NCBI GenBank assembly: GCA_037447605.1
Contig: CM074811.1
Coordinates: forward strand, 1,860,001 to 1,924,000
Reading direction: 5' to 3'
DNA length: 64,000 bases
From: Zygnema circumcarinatum SAG 698-1b
Lineage: Eukaryota > Plantae > Zygnematophyceae
The position numbers and the translations under genes are program-made. Below are positions 40,913 through 57,827 of the stretch, piece after piece; position 1 is the stretch's first letter, and each line of letters begins with the position of its first letter. Below the pieces are notes generated by a model. It had not been told where the DNA came from. It saw only the letters and a list, made by a program, of their open reading frames with translations, and ran no database searches.

Positions 40913-41656
<744 letters not shown>

Positions 41657-43361: not shown

Positions 43362-44516
<1,155 letters not shown>

Positions 44517-46105: not shown

Positions 46106-47244
46106 TATCAGTCTCCTTCAGATATTATCGCCATCCCCAGCTCCATTCCAACTCTTCCAGGTTCCGGCGGTCACCGCGGTCGACGCCTGCGAACCAACGG
46201 GGCACCAGGATTTGCGCGTGGCATCGTGAAGGATCTTCGACAGCCACGTGGCGGCGCACAATTGGAAAAACGCCTGTCTCCTGGTCGCCGTTTAACAGAA
46301 CGGCCTCGTCCGTAAAACTCGTTTTCGGCCACGTCCGCGCCCCGTTAGCGCCCCGTGGGCGCCACGTGGTGGCCCGACGCGGAAGGAAGCCAGGTGGACC
46401 ATTCATAATTCGTCACGTGCCGACTATCGGCCAGGTTCGCCAACGAGGAATAATAGGCGAGTCAAGATTGCCTCTCCACAGATCAAACCTCGTGCTGGCG
46501 TGGCACACGCTCTCGAAGATCCGATCGGACCGACCAGTGCTGTACGGACGGACAGACAGCGCTACATGGACCATTCCTAGCCCGCCACGTGTCCAAAGTC
46601 GGCCGTGCCGGGTCCAGGGCAGCCCTCGCCATGAGAACGGATCCAAAACAAATTTGCAGAAAGGGAACCTCGATCGCATCGCACGGCAGCGACGCCATTG
46701 GCGCCAGGGCCGCCTGGTGGCCCTGCAGGTATGGATGGAGGAAGGGAGGAAGGCGGACCGGGAGAGAGAGGCACCCTCTGCCCTAATCCCGCCCGTCCCA
46801 TTCTCCTTCGAACAGGACGACCCGCAGTGCCAGACACCAAAATGAAGGTGAAAATGTTCCAATTTCTGACGGAAGGCAGCTCATAACATTCCTTATCACA
46901 AATTTCAACTTATCACATATGTCGATATTTGAAACGCGATTATGGTCTGCTGCCCAACCAAAGGCCGCGATCGACTGTCTGCATGACGCCGCAATGCCAA
47001 CGAGAAACGAACGCCAACGACAAAACATCCATGCATCCATCCATCCCCCAAGCGTGTCTTTATGCATCCCCTGTGCATGCCTGCCATGGTAGGTCCACTT
47101 CCTCATCATGCCATGCATGTGCAGGTACGCGCACTACTGTTGAGCCATACTAAATTTGACCGCCTCCTCCTCTGAAGGTGCCGAGGGAAGACAGGCGTCA
47201 CGCGCCCCATTGGGCCGCTCTCACATGCGACAAAACTCGGATGC

Positions 47245-47475
47245 CTACGTGCACGTGCTGCTTGTCGGGACGCAGACTTTGGCCGCGGTCGTGTACTGCG
47301 CCCTGAGGGTGTCCAGAAGCTTCTTAGAGCAGGGCTTGCCGTTGTTCATCTTCTTGAACGTCTCCTTCTTCGAATAGCACTCCTTCAAATTGATGCAGGT
47401 GTGGCTCGCCTGCAGATTGATGGGCTTCCCTTTGCAGCCCTTCCCCAGGCCCAGATCCGCCGCTTCAAGGCACAC
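47245..47475 (-). CDS. Cys-rich terminal exon (VCLEAADLG...KVCVPTSSTCT*), probably belonging to the LRR-EGF-extensin gene
   Basis: CAG acceptor, 76 codons with strong GC3 bias and 7 Cys, TAG stop. The splice phase to the Pro-rich exon needs an unresolved intermediate exon. Confidence 0.55.
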   Translation of the reverse strand: MCLEAADLGLGKGCKGKPINLQASHTCINLKECYSKKETFKKMNNGKPCSKKLLDTLRAQYTTAAKVCVPTSSTCT

Positions 47476-48319
47476 CTGCGGGGCAGCGTCGAGGAGACTG
47501 TCAGTAGTAGGCGGATGAAAAAAGATGAATCTTGAAAACAAGGGGGAAACGGAGATTTTCAGTAGCATGAAAAGCATCCGATATTTGAATGCAACAAAAA
47601 ACACAACTGACGTTGACAGCCTTCAGACGAGGACTTGAATAAAAGTCCCGTGGACCCAAGAAAAACCTGCTTATACGCGACTAGGAAAACGAAACAAAAA
47701 GACGATCGAGGAGGGTGAACTGGCGGGAGGTTGGAAGGATCACTTCGCAAAAACGAAAGTCTACTTTGCTTCGCAACGCTTTAGCCTAGCCTGGCCAAGT
47801 GCCAACTCTACTAATCTTAGTTCAAAACCATCAGCACATCCATCAAATTCCAATTAACATCCTGAAAGAAGTAGACACTCTAACGTGAATGTGAAGTTTA
47901 TTAGACATTTTAACATCTCCTCGAGAGTGGTGCAAGCTTAAGGTTGTGCCAATGACTAGGGTAAAGGGAGTGGGACCCTGACTTGTTCCGCACAATAGCA
48001 TTGGAGATATTATACATTACTTACAAGTGCGCGTTCTGTTGACCTCTAAAGGAATCTGATGCAATAAGATAGCTCTTAGTGTGTTGTGAAGAGGATTATA
48101 ATAGATCTCTAGTAAAAATAAAACCAACTTCCCATCAGATAGCCTAATGATAACAAAACAAAAATTGACTGCAACGCAACTTTGTAGTGATCTTCAATTT
48201 TAACGATTGTGCAGACTCGAATCCAAACATTCCAAAATGATCAATAGAAAGACAGGAGCAAACTGTAATACTACGCAGTAGAAGCCATGGGAGGTGGCAA
48301 GGAACAAGGCGAAGAGTAC

Positions 48320-48772
48320 CTGCATCGGTAAGGGGAGGAGGAACTGAAGGAGAAGCGCTCGAAGGTGGACTTCGAGGGGGGAGTCGAGGGCTAGGAAGAG
48401 GTGGACGCGAGGGAAGGGGAGGAGGAGACGAGCTTGGAGGGAGTGGTGAAGGAGGAAGGGGTGGAGGAGACGAGCTTGGAGGGAGTGGTGAGGGAGGAGG
48501 AAGGGGTGGAGGAGAAGAGCTTGGAGGGAGTGGTGAAGGAGGAGGAATGGGTGGAGGAGAAGGGCTTGAAGGGAGTGGTGAAGGCGGAGGAAGGGGTGGA
48601 GAAGAGGAGCTCGTAGGGGGTCGCAGAGGAGGGGGTCGAGGACTGGGAGGAGGTTTACGTGGAGGTGGGCTTCGAGGAAGAGGTGGACGTGGAGGAGGAG
48701 AGGGGCTCGGAGTGGGACGCCGAGGAGGAGGTCGAGGACTCGGAGGAGGTGGACGCGGAGGGGATGATGAAG
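48320..48772 (-). CDS. Pro/Ser-rich extensin-like exon
   Basis: Phase-1 join from the EGF exon gives ASSSPPRPPPPSPRPPP...SPPPLPPPSPLPP...VPPPLTDA. CAG/GT boundaries. Confidence 0.8.
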
Positions 48773-49409
48773 CTGCAGTATTTCAGGGCATTTTATGAGT
48801 TCCCGTTCATTACTAAATATGGACACACTTCTTCCATAGATTACATATTTAATCATAACACGTCCTTACAAACGTTCTGGGAAGGTTCAGAACGAAATCG
48901 AAACCATTCAGAAGAAAGTAAACTTACTTCAAGTCTTTTCACGTGATTTTTCATCATCTGCATCTCCACGGAAAATCAGATCCCTATGTCACTTCTCGAG
49001 CTACGCAATTTTTTTTTTGAAAAGTAGCAAGGTCAAACTCGCAAGTTATCATGCTACTGCAAATGGAGCCGAGATATGTTGTAGCTTGCACGGGATTGGA
49101 ATGGGTCGAGAAGATTATCAAAAACTTCAACCATGATATCGGAGCGGCACCCTCGATTCATCCTAATATACTCTGCGCCATTTACTGCATGAGCTTGCAG
49201 AGTTCACCAAGTAATACTTGCGATATGATTCTAGAAGTTTGAGAATTGAACCTCTTCTATTGGCAGAATCACATGGATCGCATTCAGTGTGCTCTACCAG
49301 CAACGACAGTGTAAAGTCGATAGTTTCCACAACCTATGCCACCCTTTACTTTTCCTTTCTTGCGGAAAGCATATCCAAGCATATCTCCAAGCAGCAGGCT
49401 GCAACTCAC

Positions 49410-49741
49410 CACACGTGTCCGATGCCAGCGCATATCCCTTGTCGCATGTGCACGTGGCCGTGTCGTACCCGCACGTGCCGTGGCTCCTGCACGCTCCCTT
49501 TGGAGAACCGCTTTGGCAGAAGGCCGCGCAATCGTGCGGAGGTCTCTGCTCGTAAGCTGCGCCACATCCTGTGATATAGGCATAAATGCAGTTGTTGTAA
49601 TAGGATTCGGCGGAGAAGCAATAAGGTTCCCCATTCTGTGTAATGTTGATTCGCGAGAAGTAGTTGCCTTGGATGTCCAGGTTCAGAAAGTAATCGCCCG
49701 AAAGTGTAATGGAGCCAGTCAACTTGTTGTACTTTAACCAC
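49410..49741 (-). CDS. Exon with the last LRRs, a Cys cap and an EGF-like domain
   Basis: WLKYNKLTGSI, LDIQGNYFS, then CAAFC...CRSHGTC...CTCDKGY...C. CAG acceptor and GTGAGT donor. Confidence 0.8.
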
Positions 49742-49914
49742 CTGATGACATTATGAATGGTGCGTTAGAAAGAGAGAGAGAGAGAGAGAGGAACTTTCCA
49801 ACAGAATCCGTTCAAGTCTTCCTTGTGTCACAGCCCCTAAAAACATTGACTTGTGCTGTCTGCAAAGTCTCTGACTCCATCTTGACGACCCTACGCAACC
49901 TTCAGCCTTCAAAC

Positions 49915-50095
49915 AGTGAACCCCTAAATCTCTAAGCTTTTCCCTACATCCATTCTACCTGCAATCCCATAAACCCTGAACCCACTAAACCCCCATAGCT
50001 TCTAAATCCTTTAACTCATAAGCCGCTAAGCCCCTCGAACTTTATGACCTACAATTTTAAGCCTAAACCCTAACCCTAATCCGTAAACTCTAAAA
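49915..50095. repeat. Degenerate telomere-like (CCCTAA/CCCTAAA) tract in an intron
   Basis: CCTAAACCCTAACCCTAAT core with many decayed units. Confidence 0.6.
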
Positions 50096-50675
50096 TCTCT
50101 CGCATGCAAAGTGCAAGTTATTGCACGTCAAAAAAGCCCGCGCCGTGATTGAAGTGACCAAAAATATGACAGAAGTGACCAAAAATATGAGATAAACCTA
50201 ATACTCATGCGAGCGCGAAATAAATGTAATTGTTTGAGAGGTACAAATGCCCGGCCGAGGGCAAAAAATCCAACTGCAAATACAAGGTTATCGATGCAGC
50301 GGTGCTCACAGCTGTTGCAGTTGGGTGAGTTTAGAGATAAAGCCAGACACTCTCCCCTCTAGTTTGTTGCTGTCCATGTCCCTACAGATATACATAACGA
50401 AAAAAAGCTCAGCGAAAATAATAAGGTTGGTTCTGGACAGGAATAAATGAGGTATTCAACTCCACGTTCTATAGTCGAATTCTCAATCGCAGTCTCACAA
50501 AAACGCAGTGGGAGATTAAAAATTTACTCGTATATAAAAACCAAAAGTGAAATCAACTATGCGGCAAAGATTTACCACGCAATCATGGATACACAACATC
50601 GAAAGTTGCTGCTTTGCAAGATGCCATAAGTCACTGCACTTATAATTTCAGAAAAAATGCCATACAAATCCATAC

Positions 50676-50732
50676 AAATTCACGAGGTTCCCAATGGAGT
50701 TCGGGATGACGCCCTCAGAATTAGTAAAGCGT
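50676..50732 (-). CDS. Short or degenerate LRR exon (RFTNSEGVIPNSIGNLVNL)
   Basis: Plant LRR signature GxIPxSIGNL, CAG acceptor, in-phase GTATGG donor giving 57 bp. Confidence 0.6.
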
Positions 50733-51174
50733 CTGCATGTGAATTAGCATCAACCGATCTTCATAAAAAGCTTCACGAGCTCAGCAGATGTTTTGCGGCA
50801 AAAAAAGAAAAGAAAAAAAAAATGAAACTCGGTTGAATGATTGCTCATATGCAAACCGATGCTCGAAGTTGCCACGTGCCAACCGATCAATGAGCAGCTT
50901 CGCGGCATCTCCTCCTCCATGGAGGGCTCTACGCAGCATATGGCATGGAGGAGGAGATGCCGCCAAGGGCCACGTGCAGTTCACACGGGGGACATGACGT
51001 GACACGACACGGGTCCTCTCAAGGGCGGAAGGCACCGCTCGCAGGCACCCCCAGGAGGAGGAGTGGCGCAGGGCAGAATCTGAAGTGTATCTGGCACTGC
51101 GACGTGATTGGTTGGAAGATTCTTGACACGTCAGTGCGATCTGATACGGGGCGAGAGGCTTTCAGCTTCTTAAA

Positions 51175-51890
51175 TACTTACAATTCAGAAAGATGCGCAA
51201 GGTTGCCGATAGAATCCGGGATGGACCCCGTGAGGGAATTCGAAGACAAGACTCTGCCCAAAAAAAAAAAATATAGGAACTGAATAAACATGCTGCCACG
51301 ACTAGCATTTCTATCCCTTGCATTTTTCTGTCTGGCATGTCTATCACTTTTATTTCAGATTTACGGGGAAAAATACTCACAATACCTCCAGATTCGCAAG
51401 GTTGCCGAAAGAAGCCGGGATAAACCCCGTTAGGGAATTATAAGACAAGTCTCTGCCAAAAATGAAAAAAAAATAGGCACTGAATAAATATGCTGCCACG
51501 ACTAGCATGTCTATCACTTTCATTTCAGATTTATGGGGAAATGTACTTACAATATTTGCAGATTCGCAAGGTTGCCGATAGAATCCGGGATAGACCCCGT
51601 TAGGACATTATTATGCAAGTCTCTGCCAAAAACAAAGAAAATGGGCACTGAATAAACACGCTGCAACGACTAACATTTCTATCACTGGCATTCCTCTGTC
51701 TGGCATTTTTATCACTTTCATTTCAGATTTATGGGGAAATATACTTACAAGTATTGCAGATTCGCAAGGTTGCCGATAGAATCCGCGATAGACCCCGTTA
51801 GGGAATTAGAATCCAACCGTCTGCCAAAAATACAAAAAGGGCACTGAATAAACATGCTGCCACGACTAGCATTTCTATTACTGGCACTTC
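51175..51890. repeat. Tandem 170-200 bp exon+intron repeat, 4 copies
   Basis: Introns share CTGAATAAA(C/T)A(T/C)GCTGC(C/A)ACGACTA and ATTTCAGATTTA(T/C)GGGGAAA. Confidence 0.92.
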
Positions 51891-51977
51891 ATGGAACGAA
51901 GTAACAATTTTTTCAACTTTTTCAGGTTACCGATGGTAGATGAAATGGTTCCTTCAACGCCGTAGGACCATAAAAAT
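51182..51977 (-). CDS. Array of 72-bp single-LRR exons: 51182-51253, 51381-51452, 51551-51622, 51749-51820, and 51906-51977 (atypical splice sites)
   Basis: Translations VLSSNSLTGSIPDSIGNLAHLSEL, DLSYNSLTGFIPASFGNLANLEVL, DLHNNVLTGSIPDSIGNLANLQIL, RLDSNSLTGSIADSIGNLANLQYL, FLWSYGVEGTISSTIGNLKKLKKL. The first four have GGCAG acceptors and GT(A/G)AGT donors, all phase 2. Confidence 0.9.
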
Positions 51978-52165
51978 CCATGGCATGACATGACTAGCAT
52001 TTCATAAGGCAGGTTAGGAGGGAGAGCGTCAGAAGAAGAAAGGGCCGCGGGGATAATACTGTGAACATCCCAAACATACAGCACAAGATTTTCAATGATT
52101 ATCAGACTTGTCTTTAGAACTTATTTATGAGCAACAATATTGACAATTGAAGGGGGAATAATACT

Positions 52166-52435
52166 ATGATAGACTATATCAAGTCTACGGTGCGAAATCG
52201 AAACAAAATTCGTCTTTTAGAAAAGAACCAATACACTTTTGACGTAGATACTAAAGCCACTAAAACTGATGTAAAACGTTGGATAGAAGGTGTGTTCGGA
52301 GTCAAAGTAATAGGTATGAATAGTAAACGACTTCCAACCAAACAAAAAAGGAGAGGACTAACCGCAGGTTATCCAGTACGTTACAAACGCATGATTATCA
52401 CATTAAATTCAACAGACTCTATTCCAGTGATATAA
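52166..52435 (+). CDS. rpl23: Plastid ribosomal protein L23 (copy 1)
   Basis: IRLLEKNQYTFDVD...FGVKV..MNS...YKRMIITL. G-rich Shine-Dalgarno-like sequence upstream. Confidence 0.9.
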   Translation: MIDYIKSTVRNRNKIRLLEKNQYTFDVDTKATKTDVKRWIEGVFGVKVIGMNSKRLPTKQKRRGLTAGYPVRYKRMIITLNSTDSIPVI

Positions 52436-52470
52436 ATACACTGAGATATTGAACTTACTTATTTTTTATT

Positions 52471-52867
52471 ATGGGCATTCGTTCGTATAAAGCTTATACA
52501 CCGGGAACACGAAACAGATCTGTATCACAATTTGAAGAAATAGTTCAATCTAAACCAGAAAAGCAATTAACTTCCGGACAGCACCGCAAAAAGGGTCGTA
52601 ATAATCGAGGGGTTATTACTAGTCGTCATAGAGGTGGTGGTCACAAAAGATTGTATCGTTATATTGATTTTAAACGTGATAAATATAACATGATTGGACG
52701 TATAGTCAGTATTGAATACGATCCAAATAGAAACGCACGCATATGTTTAACATCTTATTCAGATGGAGAAAAAAGATATATACTTCATGCGCGTGGAATA
52801 GCAATAGGCGATCAAATTTTGTCTGATCCAACTGCTCCAATTTTACCAGGAAATGCTTTACCTCTGA
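52471..52867 (+). CDS. rpl2: Plastid ribosomal protein L2, exon 1 (copy 1)
   Basis: [39 protein letters not shown], followed by GTGCGG. Confidence 0.92.
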
Positions 52868-52940
52868 GTGCGGTATGAATCGTAAATTTACCTAGTCGGT
52901 AATTCTGATTCCGACTTGGCCTACAGCGCGGTCAATTAAT
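52868..52940 (+). mobile_element. 5' end of the rpl2 group II intron (truncated by gap; again at 54315-54387)
   Basis: GTGCG group II 5' consensus right after GNALPL, the position of the land-plant rpl2 intron. Confidence 0.8.
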
Positions 52941-53612
52941 NNNNNNNNNNTTCGACAACAAACAGATTGTTTATGCTATTTATTGTCAAATATAGGCATC
53001 AACAATTTCAAAAGATTTCGTTACAAATGAATCAACATAGTTAACAATTCAATTTATTATTACCCAAACTGCATTGCATTATCTGTTTTCTATTGTATAT
53101 ATTTTCCAAACCATTCTTTTTGTTGTGTAAAGATCATATAATAAGAAAGAGCAAGATTATATTTTGAAAACACTATTAGTCATGTGCTCAATTTTATTAA
53201 CGAGACTGAATACAATCTTTTTGAAAGATTGTATTATTTTCATTGACAACGATTAAAGCCTAATTGTGTGAACATTTTTTAACAGAAGGTGTTAAAAATA
53301 AATTAGTAGTGTTACACTGAAGACTATTGATAATGAGACTACGTGACTTGACATGATATAGAATATTTGTACATTATGAAGTGTGATATTGAAAACAAGT
53401 AACCAAACCACCAGTCATGTTTTGAGTTTGAAAATTCAAGTTTTTATAACTTCCAGTATTATGCAATAAATTAAACCAACACTGTCGTAATTTTATTGGA
53501 TAATACTGTGAACATTCCAAACATATAGCACAAGATTTTTAATGATTATGAGACTTGTCTTTAGAACTTATGTATGAGCAACAATATTGACAATTGAAGG
53601 GGGAATAATACT

Positions 53613-53882
53613 ATGATAGACTATATCAAGTCTACGGTGCGAAATCGAAACACAATTCGTCTTTTAGAAAAGAACCAATACACTTTTGACGTAGATACTA
53701 AAGCCACTAAAACTGATGTAAAACGTTGGATAGAAGGTGTGTTCGGAGTCAAAGTAATAGGTATGAATAGTAAACGACTTCCAACCAAACAAAAAAGGAG
53801 AGGACTAACCGCAGGTTATCCAGTACGTTACAAACGCATGATTATCACATTAAATTCAACAGACTCTATTCCAGTGATATAA
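53613..53882 (+). CDS. rpl23: Plastid ribosomal protein L23 (copy 2)
   Basis: Same as copy 1 except T14 instead of K14. Confidence 0.9.
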   Translation: MIDYIKSTVRNRNTIRLLEKNQYTFDVDTKATKTDVKRWIEGVFGVKVIGMNSKRLPTKQKRRGLTAGYPVRYKRMIITLNSTDSIPVI

Positions 53883-53917
53883 ATACACTGAGATATTGAA
53901 CTTACTTATTTTTTATT

Positions 53918-54314
53918 ATGGGCATTCGTTCGTATAAAGCTTATACACCGGGAACACGAAACAGATCTGTATCACAATTTGAAGAAATAGTTCAATCTAA
54001 ACCAGAAAAGCAATTAACTTCCGGACAGCACCGCAAAAAGGGTCGTAATAATCGAGGGGTTATTACTAGTCGTCATAGAGGTGGTGGTCACAAAAGATTG
54101 TATCGTTATATTGATTTTAAACGTGATAAATATAACATGATTGGACGTATAGTCAGTATTGAATACGATCCAAATAGAAACGCACGCATATGTTTAACAT
54201 CTTATTCAGATGGAGAAAAAAGATATATACTTCATGCGCGTGGAATAGCAATAGGCGATCAAATTTTGTCTGATCCAACTGCTCCAATTTTACCAGGAAA
54301 TGCTTTACCTCTGA
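53918..54314 (+). CDS. rpl2: Plastid ribosomal protein L2, exon 1 (copy 2)
   Basis: Translation identical to copy 1. Confidence 0.92.
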
Positions 54315-54468
54315 GTGCGGTATGAATCGTAAATTTACCTAGTCGGTAATTCTGATTCCGACTTGGCCTACAGCGCGGTCAATTAATNNNNNNNNNNGGC
54401 CACGCCGCGGGCAGGCCGCCTCTCCCCTTCTTCCATAGAGGACGGGCGGGCGGGCCGCGGCGGCTCAC

Positions 54469-54573
54469 TGTCTCGCGGGTCGATGGCCTGAGCGGCGGCT
54501 TCGCGCGGGGCGGCGGCGGCGGCAAAGAGGAGGAGCGCCGCCGCGAGAGAGAGAGAGACCGCGCGCGCGCCAT
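54469..54573 (-). pseudogene. Putative first (signal peptide) exon of the LRR gene, frameshifted by 2 nt
   Basis: ATG at 54573 and GTGAGC donor at 54468. Removing one dinucleotide from the (GA)7 tract gives MARARSLSLAAALLLFAAAAAPREAAAQAIDPRD; removing one from the adjacent (GC)5 tract also restores the frame. Confidence 0.6.
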
Positions 54574-55860
54574 CGCGGCCAAGCGCCCGCCGGAGACACC
54601 AGGGGACGCGGGGGCGGAGGCGGGCAGTATTGAAATAGAGGGGAGAGGAGGGCTGGGTCTCCCTTCGTGTTGACCGGACGTCACGTCACGGCCGCCCTCT
54701 GCAGCCAGTTGGGCGTTCAGCCGCCAGCCAGGCAGGACCGCGTAAACTTATCCTAGCACCGACCTATGCTCAAAGTAACCGTACGCACCGCCGCCCGACC
54801 GTACATGTCCGCGCGCGCGGAAACACAAATTCTGCGGCCAAATCAATGGACATGGATAAAATCAACATGGGGATCCAAAGCGGTCACTAAGGAATCCTTT
54901 TCGTCGTTTTGTGCTAGCCGTCCTGCTGTCACCCCCAACTGGATGTACGTCGGGCGGGGGCATTCGTCCTGTCCAGCCAGAGGCTCACTGTCTGTACATT
55001 GAATTTGTCGTTAGCACCAAGCACAGCCAGGCAGGCAGAGGACAGTTATATACGGAGCTGCCATGTGCGCTCAGTTCAAGCTGGAACGAAACAGCATCAT
55101 GGAAAATGATTTACATGGAGGGCGACCAATCCCCCCGGCCCCGCCCGAACCTGAACCTGAACCTGAACCTCCCCCCGCCTGTCCTGGCCCGGGCCGGGCT
55201 GGAGGCTCGAAACCCGAGGTTCGTTCGTTGGTTCGTTGCAGCCGGCCGTACGGTATGGTACCCGCGGGCGGGCGGCCGCCTGCCTGGCCAGGCCGGGCCA
55301 AGGGCGCCGCGCGCCACGTGGCAAGTGGCACTCGCGGTAGGAGCAGATCCACGAACGTGCGCGCCGAGATTCTCTGCTGAGATTCGTGCAAATCGCAAAA
55401 TCCGCGCGATCTGAGCAGGGCTACCAGATTCCGCTGCAGCGGGTCTCAGATTGTTATCAGATTTGGCGTACGGAATGCGGACCGATGGGATCCTGCTGTG
55501 GCGGCTGTCGTGTAGTGTGTTGCATAATGGAGGCACGCAACAGCAGCGAACGGACGGAGGGATCGGACGGCCGGCCGTACCGTACGGCGTGGGGCTACTG
55601 TAGCATAAAGCCAGTTACAGGGTGCGAGGCCGCTTTTGGATCAGGGGCGCAATATGTCGTTATTCAGGGTTCGGGGTTTTAGGGGGTTTAGGGGCCGGAA
55701 TTTCCTTCCTTTCGCCGATGGAGAAAAAGCTTTTTTTGCTACCTACTTTTTTCTTAAACTCTTAGATTCTATTGTGAAGCTGGTCATTCGCTTAATGGAA
55801 TATAACGAGTTTTTTGTGGCCCAAGGTCGTTTAAATCATCTCTTTTGGAAGCTGCTGAGC

Positions 55861-55864
<4 letters not shown>

Positions 55865-55910
<46 letters not shown>

Positions 55911-55914
55911 TCCC

Positions 55915-55973
<59 letters not shown>

Positions 55974-55978
55974 TCGAC

Positions 55979-56009
<31 letters not shown>

Positions 56010-56269
56010 CCAGTTCCCAGTTCCCAGTTTCTAGTTTCCAGTTTCCAGTTTTCAGTTTCTAGTTTCAACTTTCCAGTTTCCAGTTTCCAGTTTCCGGTTT
56101 CCGGTTTCCGGTTTCCAGTTTCCAGTTTCGACTTTCCAGTTTCTAGTTTCGACTTTCCAGTTTCCAGTTTCTAGTTTCAACTTTCCAGTTTCCAGTTTCC
56201 AGTTTCTAGTTTCCAGTTCCATATTCCAGTTTCCAGTTTCCATTTTGTACTTTCCAGTTTCCAGTTTCC
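55865..56269. repeat. (AGTTTCC)n 7-mer satellite, roughly 55-58 units
   Basis: Near-perfect run with variants toward the 3' side. Ends about 95 bp before the DPM3 ATG. Confidence 0.97.
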
Positions 56270-56363
56270 CCGCGAGCGGTTCGGTGTGCGGGGGCGGGCG
56301 CGCAGAGGGGCGGGCATGGCCATGGCGCGGGCGCCCTGAGGATGGCCGCGTGTTGCCGCAGCC

Positions 56364-57827
56364 ATGCGCCACGTGTACCGGCTGCTCGCGGGGGGGGGCG
56401 CGGCGCTGGCGCTCTGGCTCGGCCTGCTGGCGGCCGACCTGCCGCCCGCGCAGCGCCACGTGGCGGACCTGGTGAGCGCGCCTGCTCCATGTTTGCGAGG
56501 CGTCATATTCCTGCATTTTTTTTTTTTTAGGGTTTGCAGTCGATGGTGCTGCCCGGTATTCAGTGTTTAGTAAGGGTTTCCTGGTTTGCATTAATTTTTT
56601 GAAGGAATTTAGTCATGTGACTACTACGTGGCTATGTCCTCTCCTAAGAAGGCTTAGAAAAGCAGGTCAATAAATAGGTCAATAAATAGGTCAATAAATA
56701 GGTCAATAAATTTTCAGCAGAGAAAGTGGCACCTACTTCATATGTAGAACATGAAAAGTTGTCAGTGATTTGGTCAAGTCAATGGTGCTGCGGAGGTCAA
56801 GAATTTCCATTAAGCCAAGTACGGTTTTGGTAGACAGAAAAGGTCTACATGCTGATTCGGTTCTATGTATGTCTTTGAAAATTCACTGTCCCGTTTAACT
56901 GACAAATGTGAGGTAATTTTATTCATTTAAAGCTCTATTTTCTGACAAAGCCCTAAATGCTAATAGACAAGGTGGGGATCCTATGGACGAGAAATTTTAG
57001 TTTACAGTTGGATAAGATGAACCAAATTACGGACCATAAATCCTGCAATGAACTGCTGTAAGCTTTACTGTTCATTAGATCACGAAAGAAAGAGAAAAGG
57101 AGTCTGAGTGCGGAGTCTGTGGTAGTGACAATTAATAATGATGATTATGATGATTAAGGGGCAGTTTGAAAGACTCTACCAGATGCCGAATTCACTTCAT
57201 GAATTGCGGCTTCTATGGGCTATTTGACACTTTTATGCTCCAAATGCCCAGCATTGTGCTCAAATATCTGATAAGAAATGACTTTCAAAGTCAAGAAAGG
57301 CTCCTCCAAAGGCAAACTGTCTGATGTAGAAGAGGGGTGCTTTGAACTGGGCCTGCACAGTTGCCTCTCTATGCGCTTATGGCGCTAGCCTTCTATGGGC
57401 TGGCAATGCTCGGTTATGGCATCATGGTCTTCCCAACATGCCCCTATGAAGCAGAACTGCTGCAGCAGGTACGCTTCTATTCATACTCGCTGCGCTGTCT
57501 TGTCTTGTCATTCGGTGGAGTGAAGCGCACTCATGGAAATGAACTGCATTTTTCTTGTTGGATTCGGGTCATGGAAATTTTCATATGTGACATGCTTCCG
57601 CCCGTATTCAAGACGAGCACAGGACGGCCTATACCTGGAATCCACTCTGCACACTGTGTTTCCATTAGCTGCTCCTTTGAATGGTTTCGATGTTCATCTG
57701 CAAAGTTCAGAAGGCTTCAACATGCTCAGGGAAGGAACTCTTCACTCTTATGCAGGACATTCGCGAGGCAAATGAATACTTCCAGAAGCATGGAGTCAAC
57801 GTGGGCCTTGCAAAGCCCACTTCGTGA
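56364..57827 (+). CDS. DPM3: Dolichol-phosphate mannosyltransferase subunit 3; exons 56364-56471, 57361-57468, 57756-57827
   Basis: Two hydrophobic helices then LPLYALM...YGLAMLGYGIMVFPTCPYEAELLQQ-DIREANEYFQKHGV. All phase-0 GT-AG joins, 95 aa. Confidence 0.9.
56664..56711. repeat. (AGGTCAATAAAT)4 tandem repeat in DPM3 intron 1
   Basis: Four perfect 12-mers. Confidence 0.9.

What the first reader, a model, noticed from the sequence alone, without database searches (positions are those of the whole stretch)
51182..51977. Tandem one-LRR-per-exon cassette array with variable binding-surface residues: candidate receptor-diversification system
Seen: four recently duplicated exon+intron modules plus an older fifth exon. 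Each exon is 72 bp and phase 2-2, so any one can be skipped, duplicated or swapped without shifting frame. Introns and the LRR scaffold (N.LTG.I..S.GNLA.L) are highly similar, while changes cluster around the xxLxLxxN strand: R/D/D/V-L-DS/HN/SY/SS-N at the start and QY/QI/EV/SE at the end. Established: these positions form the concave ligand-binding face, and a comparable exon-shuffled 24-aa LRR organisation is known in brown-algal ROCO genes. Inference: a streptophyte alga may diversify extracellular LRR receptors by unequal crossover or exon skipping.
Basis: partly seen in the sequence, partly recalled or inferred. Interest (0 to 1): 0.8.

Follow-up and report, generated by a model that had tools for sequence, protein, structure and literature searches.

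The report
Young tandem LRR exon array
A gene for a probably secreted leucine-rich-repeat protein in an alga related to land plants copied one 72-base exon plus its intron about four times. The ligand-facing codons then changed far faster than the introns, which is a clear example of a known way for receptors to evolve, not a new diversity-making machine.

Summary
On the minus strand there are four 72-nt exons: E1 51749-51820, E2 51551-51622, E3 51381-51452 and E4 51182-51253. Each has AG/GT splice sites, is phase 2-2 and encodes one plant-type 24-residue LRR. They are separated by homologous 98-127-nt introns. An older LRR exon, E0 (51906-51977), lies upstream.

Introns differ by 0.10-0.16 substitutions per site and exons by 0.17-0.28. 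At the five solvent-exposed codons of xxLxLxx, 14 of 15 bases vary. That compares with 10 of 57 elsewhere in the exon (p=8e-8) and 16 of 96 in introns (p=2e-5 to 9e-9).

The array is part of a larger gene. Three older LRR exons follow, then an LRR-cap/EGF-like exon and a proline-rich exon. The nearest relative found is a Mesotaenium LRR-EGF-proline-rich receptor kinase.

The 72-nt exon with a phase-2 intron splitting the first Leu of xxLxLxx is the layout already described for rice LRR-kinases. Tandem exon duplication with diversifying selection is also known.

Nothing points to a dedicated system. There are no spare or inverted cassettes and no selector or docking pairing. No transcript or strain data were within reach.

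The scan has noted at least six similar arrays elsewhere in this genome. Verdict: a real feature, an ordinary mechanism, and a new member of a known kind.

The parts
51906..51977 (-). E0, an older LRR exon with Tyr at the Asn position. A likely real exon is 51906-51993 (88 nt, phase 1-2), using an upstream CTAG acceptor with a pyrimidine tract and a CTAAC branch-like site.
   Evidence: It is 33-35/72 identical to E1-E4. The homologous acceptor is lost and the donor is GTTACT.
51821..51905 (-). Intron I0. Its 3' 60-70 nt belong to the repeated module and its 5' 26 nt do not, which marks the left edge of the duplicated unit.
   Evidence: (87.5% identity to I1 over 72 nt).
51749..51820 (-). E1, a 72-nt phase 2-2 exon encoding one 24-residue plant-type LRR (Pro of GxIP replaced by Ala).
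   Evidence: Pfam LRR_1 13.2 bits.
51623..51748 (-). Intron I1 (126 nt), a module intron.
51551..51622 (-). E2, a 72-nt phase 2-2 LRR exon.
   Evidence: LRR_1 17.2 bits.
51453..51550 (-). Intron I2 (98 nt), a module intron. It carries a 30-nt deletion that fuses two 17-nt internal repeats.
51381..51452 (-). E3, a 72-nt phase 2-2 LRR exon.
   Evidence: LRR_1 19.3 bits and LRR_8 18.8 bits.
51254..51380 (-). Intron I3 (127 nt), a module intron.
51182..51253 (-). E4, a 72-nt phase 2-2 LRR exon and the most diverged of the four. It has 3 synonymous differences in scaffold codons, where E1-E3 have none among themselves.
   Evidence: LRR_1 18.0 bits.
50733..51181 (-). Intron I4 (449 nt). Only about the first 40 nt resemble the module intron, which marks the right edge of the duplicated unit. 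It contains a strong hairpin at 50898-50967.
50676..50732 (-). E5, an older and shortened LRR exon (57 nt, still phase 2-2).
50310..50381 (-). E6, an older 72-nt phase 2-2 LRR exon whose flanking introns are unrelated to the module.
49410..49741 (-). E7 (332 nt, phase 2 to 1): the last LRRs, a Cys-containing cap and an EGF-like module.
   Evidence: EGF_2 E=0.016, EGF_Teneurin E=0.01, both below cut-off; 34% identity to Mesotaenium ME000014S01168, pairwise E=5e-11.
48320..48772 (-). E8, a proline-rich extensin-like exon. It is in frame with E7 (phase 1) and contains a 45-nt tandem repeat.
54469..54573 (-). Candidate first exon. The hydrophobic signal-peptide-like frame is not the ATG frame, but its phase-1 end fits the 88-nt E0 model.

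Best explanation
This is an ordinary evolutionary product, not a machine. An ancestral unit was copied head to tail about three times, by unequal crossing-over or replication slippage with breakpoints inside introns. The unit held about 70 nt of upstream intron, one 72-nt LRR exon and about 55 nt of downstream intron. The host gene encodes a probably secreted, wall-associated plant-type LRR protein (LRRs, then an EGF-like cap, then a proline-rich stalk).

Each exon is 72 nt and phase 2-2, so every copy added exactly one turn to the LRR solenoid without breaking the frame. After duplication, the scaffold codons and introns drifted slowly. The five solvent-exposed codons of each beta-strand (x2, x3, x5, x7, x8 of xxLxLxx) were replaced almost to saturation. 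These codons lie at the two exon edges and become contiguous only after splicing. The best reading is diversifying selection for a new binding surface.

What is shown: the structure, the phases, the homology of the modules and the rate contrast. What is inferred: selection as the cause, secretion, ligand binding and expression.
For: - **Structure.** Four 72-nt AG/GT exons in phase 2-2 with 81-91% identical introns.
- **Unit boundaries.** Module homology starts 26 nt into I0 and fades about 40 nt into I4, so the unit boundaries lie in introns.
- **Overall rates.** Intron JC distance is 0.10-0.16 and exon distance is 0.17-0.28.
- **Synonymous sites.** Scaffold codons of E1-E3 show 0 synonymous differences over about 15 synonymous sites, so the copies are young.
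- **Exposed codons.** Their pN is 0.40-0.82, at least 4-fold the intron rate. Whole-exon dN/dS is 2.6-4.3 among E1-E3.
- **Clustering tests.** 14/15 against 10/57 gives p=8e-8. Against introns, p is 2e-5 to 9e-9.
- **Gene context.** The array continues in frame into older LRR exons, an LRR-cap/EGF-like exon and a proline-rich exon.
- **Nearest relative.** A Mesotaenium LRR-EGF-Pro-rich-TM-kinase.
- **Precedent.** The same intron position, phase and exon size, with origin by exon duplication, are described for rice LRR-kinases (PMC3050792).
Against: - The sample is tiny: 4 x 24 codons and only 1-2 synonymous differences among E1-E3. The classical dN/dS is therefore not significant by itself, and the case rests on introns as the neutral yardstick.
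- Gene conversion could have homogenised the introns and scaffold, which would make the copies look younger than they are.
- No transcript, protein or allele of this gene was found.
- The 5' end is doubtful. E0 has a weak donor and has lost its homologous acceptor. The signal-peptide-like frame of the first exon is out of frame with its ATG. The first intron holds a duplicated plastid-DNA block with two N gaps. The gene could be dying or misassembled.
Confidence: 0.75

Rival explanations
1. Concerted evolution. The modules are old, and repeated gene conversion or unequal exchange keeps the introns and scaffold codons alike. Selection rejects conversions that overwrite the binding-face codons, so those codons carry ancient divergence rather than fast recent change.
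For: - The exposed codons are near saturation, and several differ at all three bases.
- Intron I2 looks like a mosaic: I1-like at its 5' end and I3-like at its 3' end, with a 30-nt deletion between internal repeats.
- Intron distances are not tree-like. I2 is close to both I1 and I3, while I1 and I3 are further apart.
Against: The variable patches are only 6-12 nt long and sit 1-2 nt from the splice sites. Conversion tracts would have to stop precisely on both sides of them every time. This model still needs selection for diversity at the same codons, so it changes the timing and not the conclusion.
Confidence: 0.15
2. A dedicated receptor-diversification system. The cassettes would be combined differently in different transcripts, cells or individuals, by exon skipping, mutually exclusive splicing or frequent unequal crossover. 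This would parallel brown-algal ROCO genes or, more remotely, lamprey VLRs.
For: - Every exon is frame-neutral (72 or 57 nt, phase 2-2), so any subset would stay in frame.
- Brown-algal ROCO genes with the same exon size are argued to shuffle and to splice alternatively (PMC3341825; PMC11378527, title and abstract).
- A land-plant SERK gene can skip its first LRR exon (PMC3061892).
- Earlier scan notes report at least six similar arrays in this genome (unchecked by me).
Against: - Frame neutrality is a general property of this gene class (PMC3050792).
- There are no spare, silent or reverse-oriented cassettes. The module occurs nowhere else in the 64-kb window.
- All four exons have normal splice sites.
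- There is no docking or selector complementarity among the introns.
- No known RNA family is present.
- No transcript evidence exists either way.
Confidence: 0.05
3. A decaying gene or pseudogene. The array is a relic of past selection in a gene now disabled at its 5' end.
For: - The ATG frame of the first exon is not the hydrophobic frame.
- E0 has lost the homologous acceptor and has a weak donor.
- A 2.3-kb plastid-derived block with N gaps lies in the first intron.
- E1 has Ala for the conserved Pro, and scaffold pN (0.05-0.13) is about the intron rate.
- No matching protein exists in the databases.
Against: - All eight downstream exons are open, with canonical splice sites and matching phases.
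- The hydrophobic frame of exon 1 ends in phase 1, exactly as the 88-nt E0 model requires. A one-base error inside a dinucleotide repeat of the assembly is therefore as likely as a real frameshift.
- Without the plastid block the first intron would be about 128 nt, the normal size for this gene.
- This organism's genome does not appear to be in the protein collections: the two searches with this gene's E7 exon found no near-identical protein and the best outside match to the plastid-derived rpl23 was 87%, so absence of a match carries little weight.
Confidence: 0.2

Closest known systems
Land-plant LRR-kinase/LRR-RLP genes with one LRR per 72-nt exon (rice 'group 5' LRR-kinases; SERK-type genes)
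   Same: - 72-nt exons that each encode one 24-residue plant-type LRR.
- Phase-2 introns that split the first Leu of xxLxLxx.
- Origin of repeats by exon duplication.
- Positively selected sites in the LRR domain (PMC3050792).
- An LRR exon can be skipped in frame (MtSERK3, PMC3061892).
   Different: - No transmembrane or kinase part was found downstream in this gene.
- The LRRs are followed by an EGF-like module and a proline-rich stalk.
- The duplicated units here are young enough that their introns are still 81-91% identical.
Ectocarpus (brown alga) LRR-ROCO genes with shuffled 72-nt LRR exons
   Same: One 24-residue LRR per 72-nt frame-neutral exon, recent exon duplication, and positive selection on the concave face (PMC3341825).
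   Different: - This gene is an extracellular plant-type LRR, not a cytosolic ROC-COR GTPase.
- The exon boundaries fall at a different point of the repeat.
- No inactivated or inverted LRR exons lie in the introns here.
- Exchange between loci was not testable.
Mesotaenium endlicherianum ME000014S01168 (LRR - EGF-like - Pro-rich - TM - kinase)
   Same: It is the best database relative of exon E7: 34% identity over 109 aligned positions (7% gaps), covering the last LRRs, the Cys pattern and the EGF-like module. A proline-rich stretch follows, as it does here.
   Different: It has a transmembrane helix and a protein kinase. Its gene structure could not be fetched.
Diversifying selection on solvent-exposed xxLxLxx residues of plant resistance-type LRR proteins (Cf, Xa21, PGIP)
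   Same: Variation is confined to the five x positions of the beta-strand while the scaffold is conserved. This rests on my own knowledge of that literature, and PGIP is named in PMC3341825.
   Different: Here the comparison is between young repeats inside one gene, with their own introns as the neutral reference. It is not between alleles or paralogues.
LRX (LRR-extensin) wall proteins of land plants
   Same: LRR domain, then a Cys-containing region, then a proline-rich extensin-like region. The LRX architecture itself comes from my own knowledge.
   Different: The Cys region here looks EGF-like. Homology to LRX was not tested, and the C-terminal end of this gene model is unresolved.

Membership tests
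Plant-specific 24-residue LRR class | 24-residue period with the consensus LxxLxLxxNxL(T/S)GxIPxxLGxLxx | tested here: met
   E1-E4 read x-L-xx-N-x-L-T-G-x-I-P-x-S-I-G-N-L-xx-L-xx with a split Leu. E1 has Ala for Pro.
Plant-specific 24-residue LRR class | Pfam LRR model above the gathering score | tested here: inconclusive
   Single exons score 13.2-19.3 bits for LRR_1 against a cut-off of 20.6. The joined exons were not scanned.
Streptophyte LRR-RLK/RLP genes with one-LRR exons | 72-nt exon per LRR and a phase-2 intron splitting the first Leu of xxLxLxx | tested here: met
   compared with the description in PMC3050792.
Streptophyte LRR-RLK/RLP genes with one-LRR exons | Signal peptide and N-terminal cap | tested here: inconclusive
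   A hydrophobic signal-like frame exists in exon 54469-54573 but is out of frame with the ATG. No LRRNT-type cap was seen.
Streptophyte LRR-RLK (kinase-bearing) | Transmembrane helix plus protein kinase domain downstream | tested here: not met
   No kinase-like ORF lies between the array and the polyubiquitin gene at 44516. Pfam finds nothing in the downstream ORFs. The Mesotaenium relative does have a kinase.
Ectocarpus ROCO-type exon-shuffling receptors | ROC-COR GTPase attached to the LRRs | tested here: not met
   The downstream exons are EGF-like and proline-rich.
Ectocarpus ROCO-type exon-shuffling receptors | Inactivated or reverse-oriented LRR exons in introns, and exchange of exons among loci | tested here: not met
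   No LRR motif on the + strand and no further module copy in the window. Exchange among loci is not testable without the genome.
VLR-type somatic cassette assembly | An incomplete germline gene flanked by banks of cassettes that lack splice sites | tested here: not met
   All cassettes are in-line exons with canonical AG/GT, and there are no flanking banks.
Dscam-type mutually exclusive splicing | A docking site complementary to a selector sequence in each variable-exon intron | tested here: not met
   The inverted-repeat scan of 50300-52130 found only a local hairpin in I4 and short, weak pairs.
LRX (LRR-extensin) | LRR domain, Cys-rich hinge and extensin domain with Ser-Pro(n) repeats | tested here: inconclusive
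   The order LRR, Cys/EGF-like, Pro-rich (SPPP, PPSPLPP) is present. Homology to LRX proteins was not tested.

The most novel reading that the evidence does not exclude
This array would be one unit of a genome-wide repertoire of young one-LRR-per-exon arrays in a zygnematophycean alga. The cassettes would turn over by frequent unequal crossover and be variably included by splicing. That would give the closest algal relatives of land plants a population-level or transcript-level receptor-diversification strategy like the one proposed for brown-algal ROCO genes.
Probability: 0.07. Interest if true: 0.65.

Novelty: new member of a known kind. Interest (0 to 1): 0.28.

Why it matters
This is a clean, small example of how a binding surface grows and changes. 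The repeats are young enough that their own introns serve as an internal neutral clock. It also shows that the 72-nt, phase-2, one-LRR exon layout of land-plant receptor genes is present and actively duplicating in a zygnematophycean-type alga. Together with the other arrays noted in this genome, it could feed a genome-wide study of LRR repertoire turnover before plants moved onto land. Taken by itself, it adds no new principle.

Tried and rejected
- **Big HMMER search with E7.** It gave only three weak hits. The best informative one is a Mesotaenium receptor kinase. There was no near-identical protein, so it gave no transcript or annotation evidence. I ran this before the word search because the word search's length filter would hide full-length relatives.
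- **Word search with E7.** No candidates.
- **Metagenome scan with a 19-nt conserved intron word.** It returned six loci, all chance matches of 19-24 nt with no further similarity.
- **Gene structure of relatives.** Fetching the Mesotaenium gene failed because it is not on record. The ENA relative is a 1.2-kb metagenome contig with no useful context.
- **Earlier findings by sequence.** Blank.
- **Rfam on 47000-56500.** No family found.
- **tRNA scan of the plastid-like block.** None found.
- **Docking or selector complementarity.** Searched for and not found.
- **Module copies elsewhere in the window.** None found.
- **Left out.** The joined spliced model was not searched, scanned or folded. 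Exons were scanned one by one by reference.

Full report
**What is there**

Read on the minus strand, 51182-51820 holds four exons of exactly 72 nt: E1 51749-51820, E2 51551-51622, E3 51381-51452 and E4 51182-51253. Each is preceded by a pyrimidine tract and CAG and followed by GT(A/G)AGT. The first base of each exon completes a Leu codon begun by the last two bases of the previous exon (TT|A or TT|G). All exons are therefore phase 2-2.

Each exon encodes one plant-type 24-residue LRR: x-L-xx-N-x-L-T-G-x-I-P-x-S-I-G-N-L-xx-L-xx. Taken singly, the exons score 13-19 bits on Pfam LRR_1, just under the 20.6-bit cut-off.

The three introns between them are 126, 98 and 127 nt long and 86-91% identical. 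The 3' 60-70 nt of the intron upstream of E1 also belong to the family. Start-to-start spacing is 198, 170 and 199 nt.

It is as distant from them as the older downstream exon E6 is.

**Is the clustering real?**

I fixed the five exposed positions of xxLxLxx (x2, x3, x5, x7, x8) in advance from LRR structure.

| Comparison | Exposed codons | Reference | Fisher p |
|---|---|---|---|
| Four exons, bases that vary | 14/15 | 10/57 in the rest of the exon | 8e-8 |
| Any three exons, bases that vary | 11-14/15 | 16/96 intron columns | 2e-5 to 9e-9 |
| Rest of exon against introns | n/a | no different | 0.35-1 |

- Jukes-Cantor distances are 0.10-0.16 for introns and 0.17-0.28 for exons.
- Among E1-E3 the 18 scaffold codons carry no synonymous difference. 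The exposed codons have pN of 0.40-0.76 there, and up to 0.82 in the pairs that include E4.
- Whole-exon dN/dS is 2.6-4.3 among E1-E3, but it rests on only one or two synonymous changes.
- E4 is somewhat older, with three synonymous scaffold changes.

**How the array arose**

Module homology begins 26 nt into the intron upstream of E1 and fades about 40 nt into the intron downstream of E4. The copied unit was therefore about 70 nt of intron, the exon, and about 55 nt of the next intron. This is the signature of unequal crossing-over or slippage with intronic breakpoints.

Intron I2 lacks 30 nt exactly between two 17-nt internal repeats, and it resembles I1 on its 5' side and I3 on its 3' side. 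So small-scale unequal exchange has continued. The copies differ by 10-25%, so they are not an assembly duplication.

**The gene around it**

Downstream on the same strand and in matching phase lie:
- E5, 50676-50732: 57 nt, a shortened LRR.
- E6, 50310-50381: 72 nt.
- E7, 49410-49741: the last LRRs, a Cys-containing cap and an EGF-like module. EGF_2 gives E=0.016, below the cut-off.
- E8, 48320-48772: proline-rich and extensin-like.

I found no transmembrane or kinase exon before the polyubiquitin gene at 44516. I did not resolve the C-terminal end of the model.

Upstream, an 88-nt version of E0 (51906-51993) has a pyrimidine tract, a CTAAC branch-like site and a phase-1 start. That start fits the signal-peptide-like frame of a GC-rich exon at 54469-54573. 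However, that frame is shifted relative to the exon's ATG, inside dinucleotide repeats.

The intron between these two exons contains a plastid-derived block that occurs twice, each copy ending in ten Ns. Without the block the intron would be about 128 nt.

**Relatives and organism**

An exhaustive HMMER search with E7 found only three weak hits. The informative one is Mesotaenium endlicherianum ME000014S01168, an LRR, EGF-like, Pro-rich, TM, kinase protein. The word search found nothing.

The plastid-derived rpl23 is 87% identical to an unnamed sequence from a read-archive assembly and 72% identical to Roya, a member of the Zygnematophyceae. The organism is therefore a streptophyte alga of the zygnematophycean kind, and its proteome does not appear to be in these collections. 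This means that the absence of a matching protein says little about expression.

**Comparison with what is known**

- Rice LRR-kinase genes are described as having LRR-region introns that split the first Leu of xxLxLxx in phase 2. Their 72-nt exons encode one repeat and arose by exon duplication and shuffling (PMC3050792). That is exactly the layout here.
- A legume SERK gene can skip its first LRR exon in frame (PMC3061892).
- Brown-algal ROCO genes have one LRR per 72-nt exon. They show recent shuffling and positive selection on the concave face (PMC3341825).

**Test of the 'diversification system' idea**

- The module intron and exon occur only at this locus in the 64-kb window.
- No LRR motif lies on the other strand or inside the introns.
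- The introns have no docking or selector complementarity.
- No Rfam family matches.
- A metagenome scan with an intron word gave only chance hits.
- Transcripts, strains and the rest of the genome were out of reach.

Exons were handled one by one by reference.

**Earlier notes of this scan**

Six other notes on this genome describe similar young one-LRR-per-exon arrays, with units of about 190-198 nt in two of them. Follow-up agents reached the same verdict on each. I did not check those loci. They suggest the phenomenon is genome-wide. That is the main reason the novel reading keeps a small probability.

**Verdict**

The mechanism is ordinary: tandem exon-plus-intron duplication followed by diversifying change of ligand-facing codons, in a probably secreted LRR-EGF-proline-rich protein. 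It is a new member of a known kind, of modest interest.

Noticed in passing
window 52051-54397: A plastid-derived block holds rpl23, rpl2 exon 1 and the GTGCG start of the rpl2 group II intron (Pfam L23 E=4e-20, L2_N E=1e-35). It lies inside the first intron of the LRR gene. Block 52051-52950 recurs at 53498-54397 (period 1447), and both copies end in the same N10 gap. The copies differ at 6 sites, all within the first 160 nt. It is either a real nuclear plastid-DNA insert that the assembler handled badly or an assembly artefact.
   Followed up: partly
window 54469-54573 (-): The candidate first exon has an ATG frame that gives a non-hydrophobic Arg/Ser/Pro peptide. A shifted frame gives a signal-peptide-like hydrophobic stretch, and that frame ends in the phase that the next exon needs. 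The shift lies within GC and CT dinucleotide repeats, so it could be an assembly error or a real frameshift.
   Followed up: partly
window 50898-50967: A near-perfect hairpin in the 449-nt intron after E4: 24-nt arms, 96% complementary, 22-nt loop. As RNA on the gene strand it folds at -53.4 kcal/mol, z-score -6.6. It has no Rfam match, and its nature (MITE end, small-RNA precursor) is unknown.
   Followed up: partly
window 43365-44516 and 40916-41656 (-): Two polyubiquitin genes on the minus strand, with five and three head-to-tail ubiquitin units, lie about 1.7 kb apart, downstream of the LRR gene.
   Followed up: no
window 55865-56170: A 7-nt satellite (AGTTTCC, 95% matches, about 19 copies up to 56000, the end of the scanned stretch; repetitive ORFs suggest it runs on to about 56170) lies just upstream of the LRR gene's putative promoter region.
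   Followed up: no
window 48412-48618: A 45-nt tandem repeat (4.7 copies, 89% matches) lies inside the proline-rich exon. The extensin-like stalk is therefore also growing by internal duplication.
   Followed up: no
window 49950-50100 (-): Degenerate plant-telomere-like TTTAGGG-type repeats lie inside the intron between E6 and E7.
   Followed up: no
L001 (ENA ERZ19026226, scaffold_91458): A 1.2-kb environmental metagenome contig carries an ORF related to the LRR-cap/EGF-like exon (46% identity for the 142-residue representative of its cluster). The family therefore also occurs in uncultured relatives.
   Followed up: no
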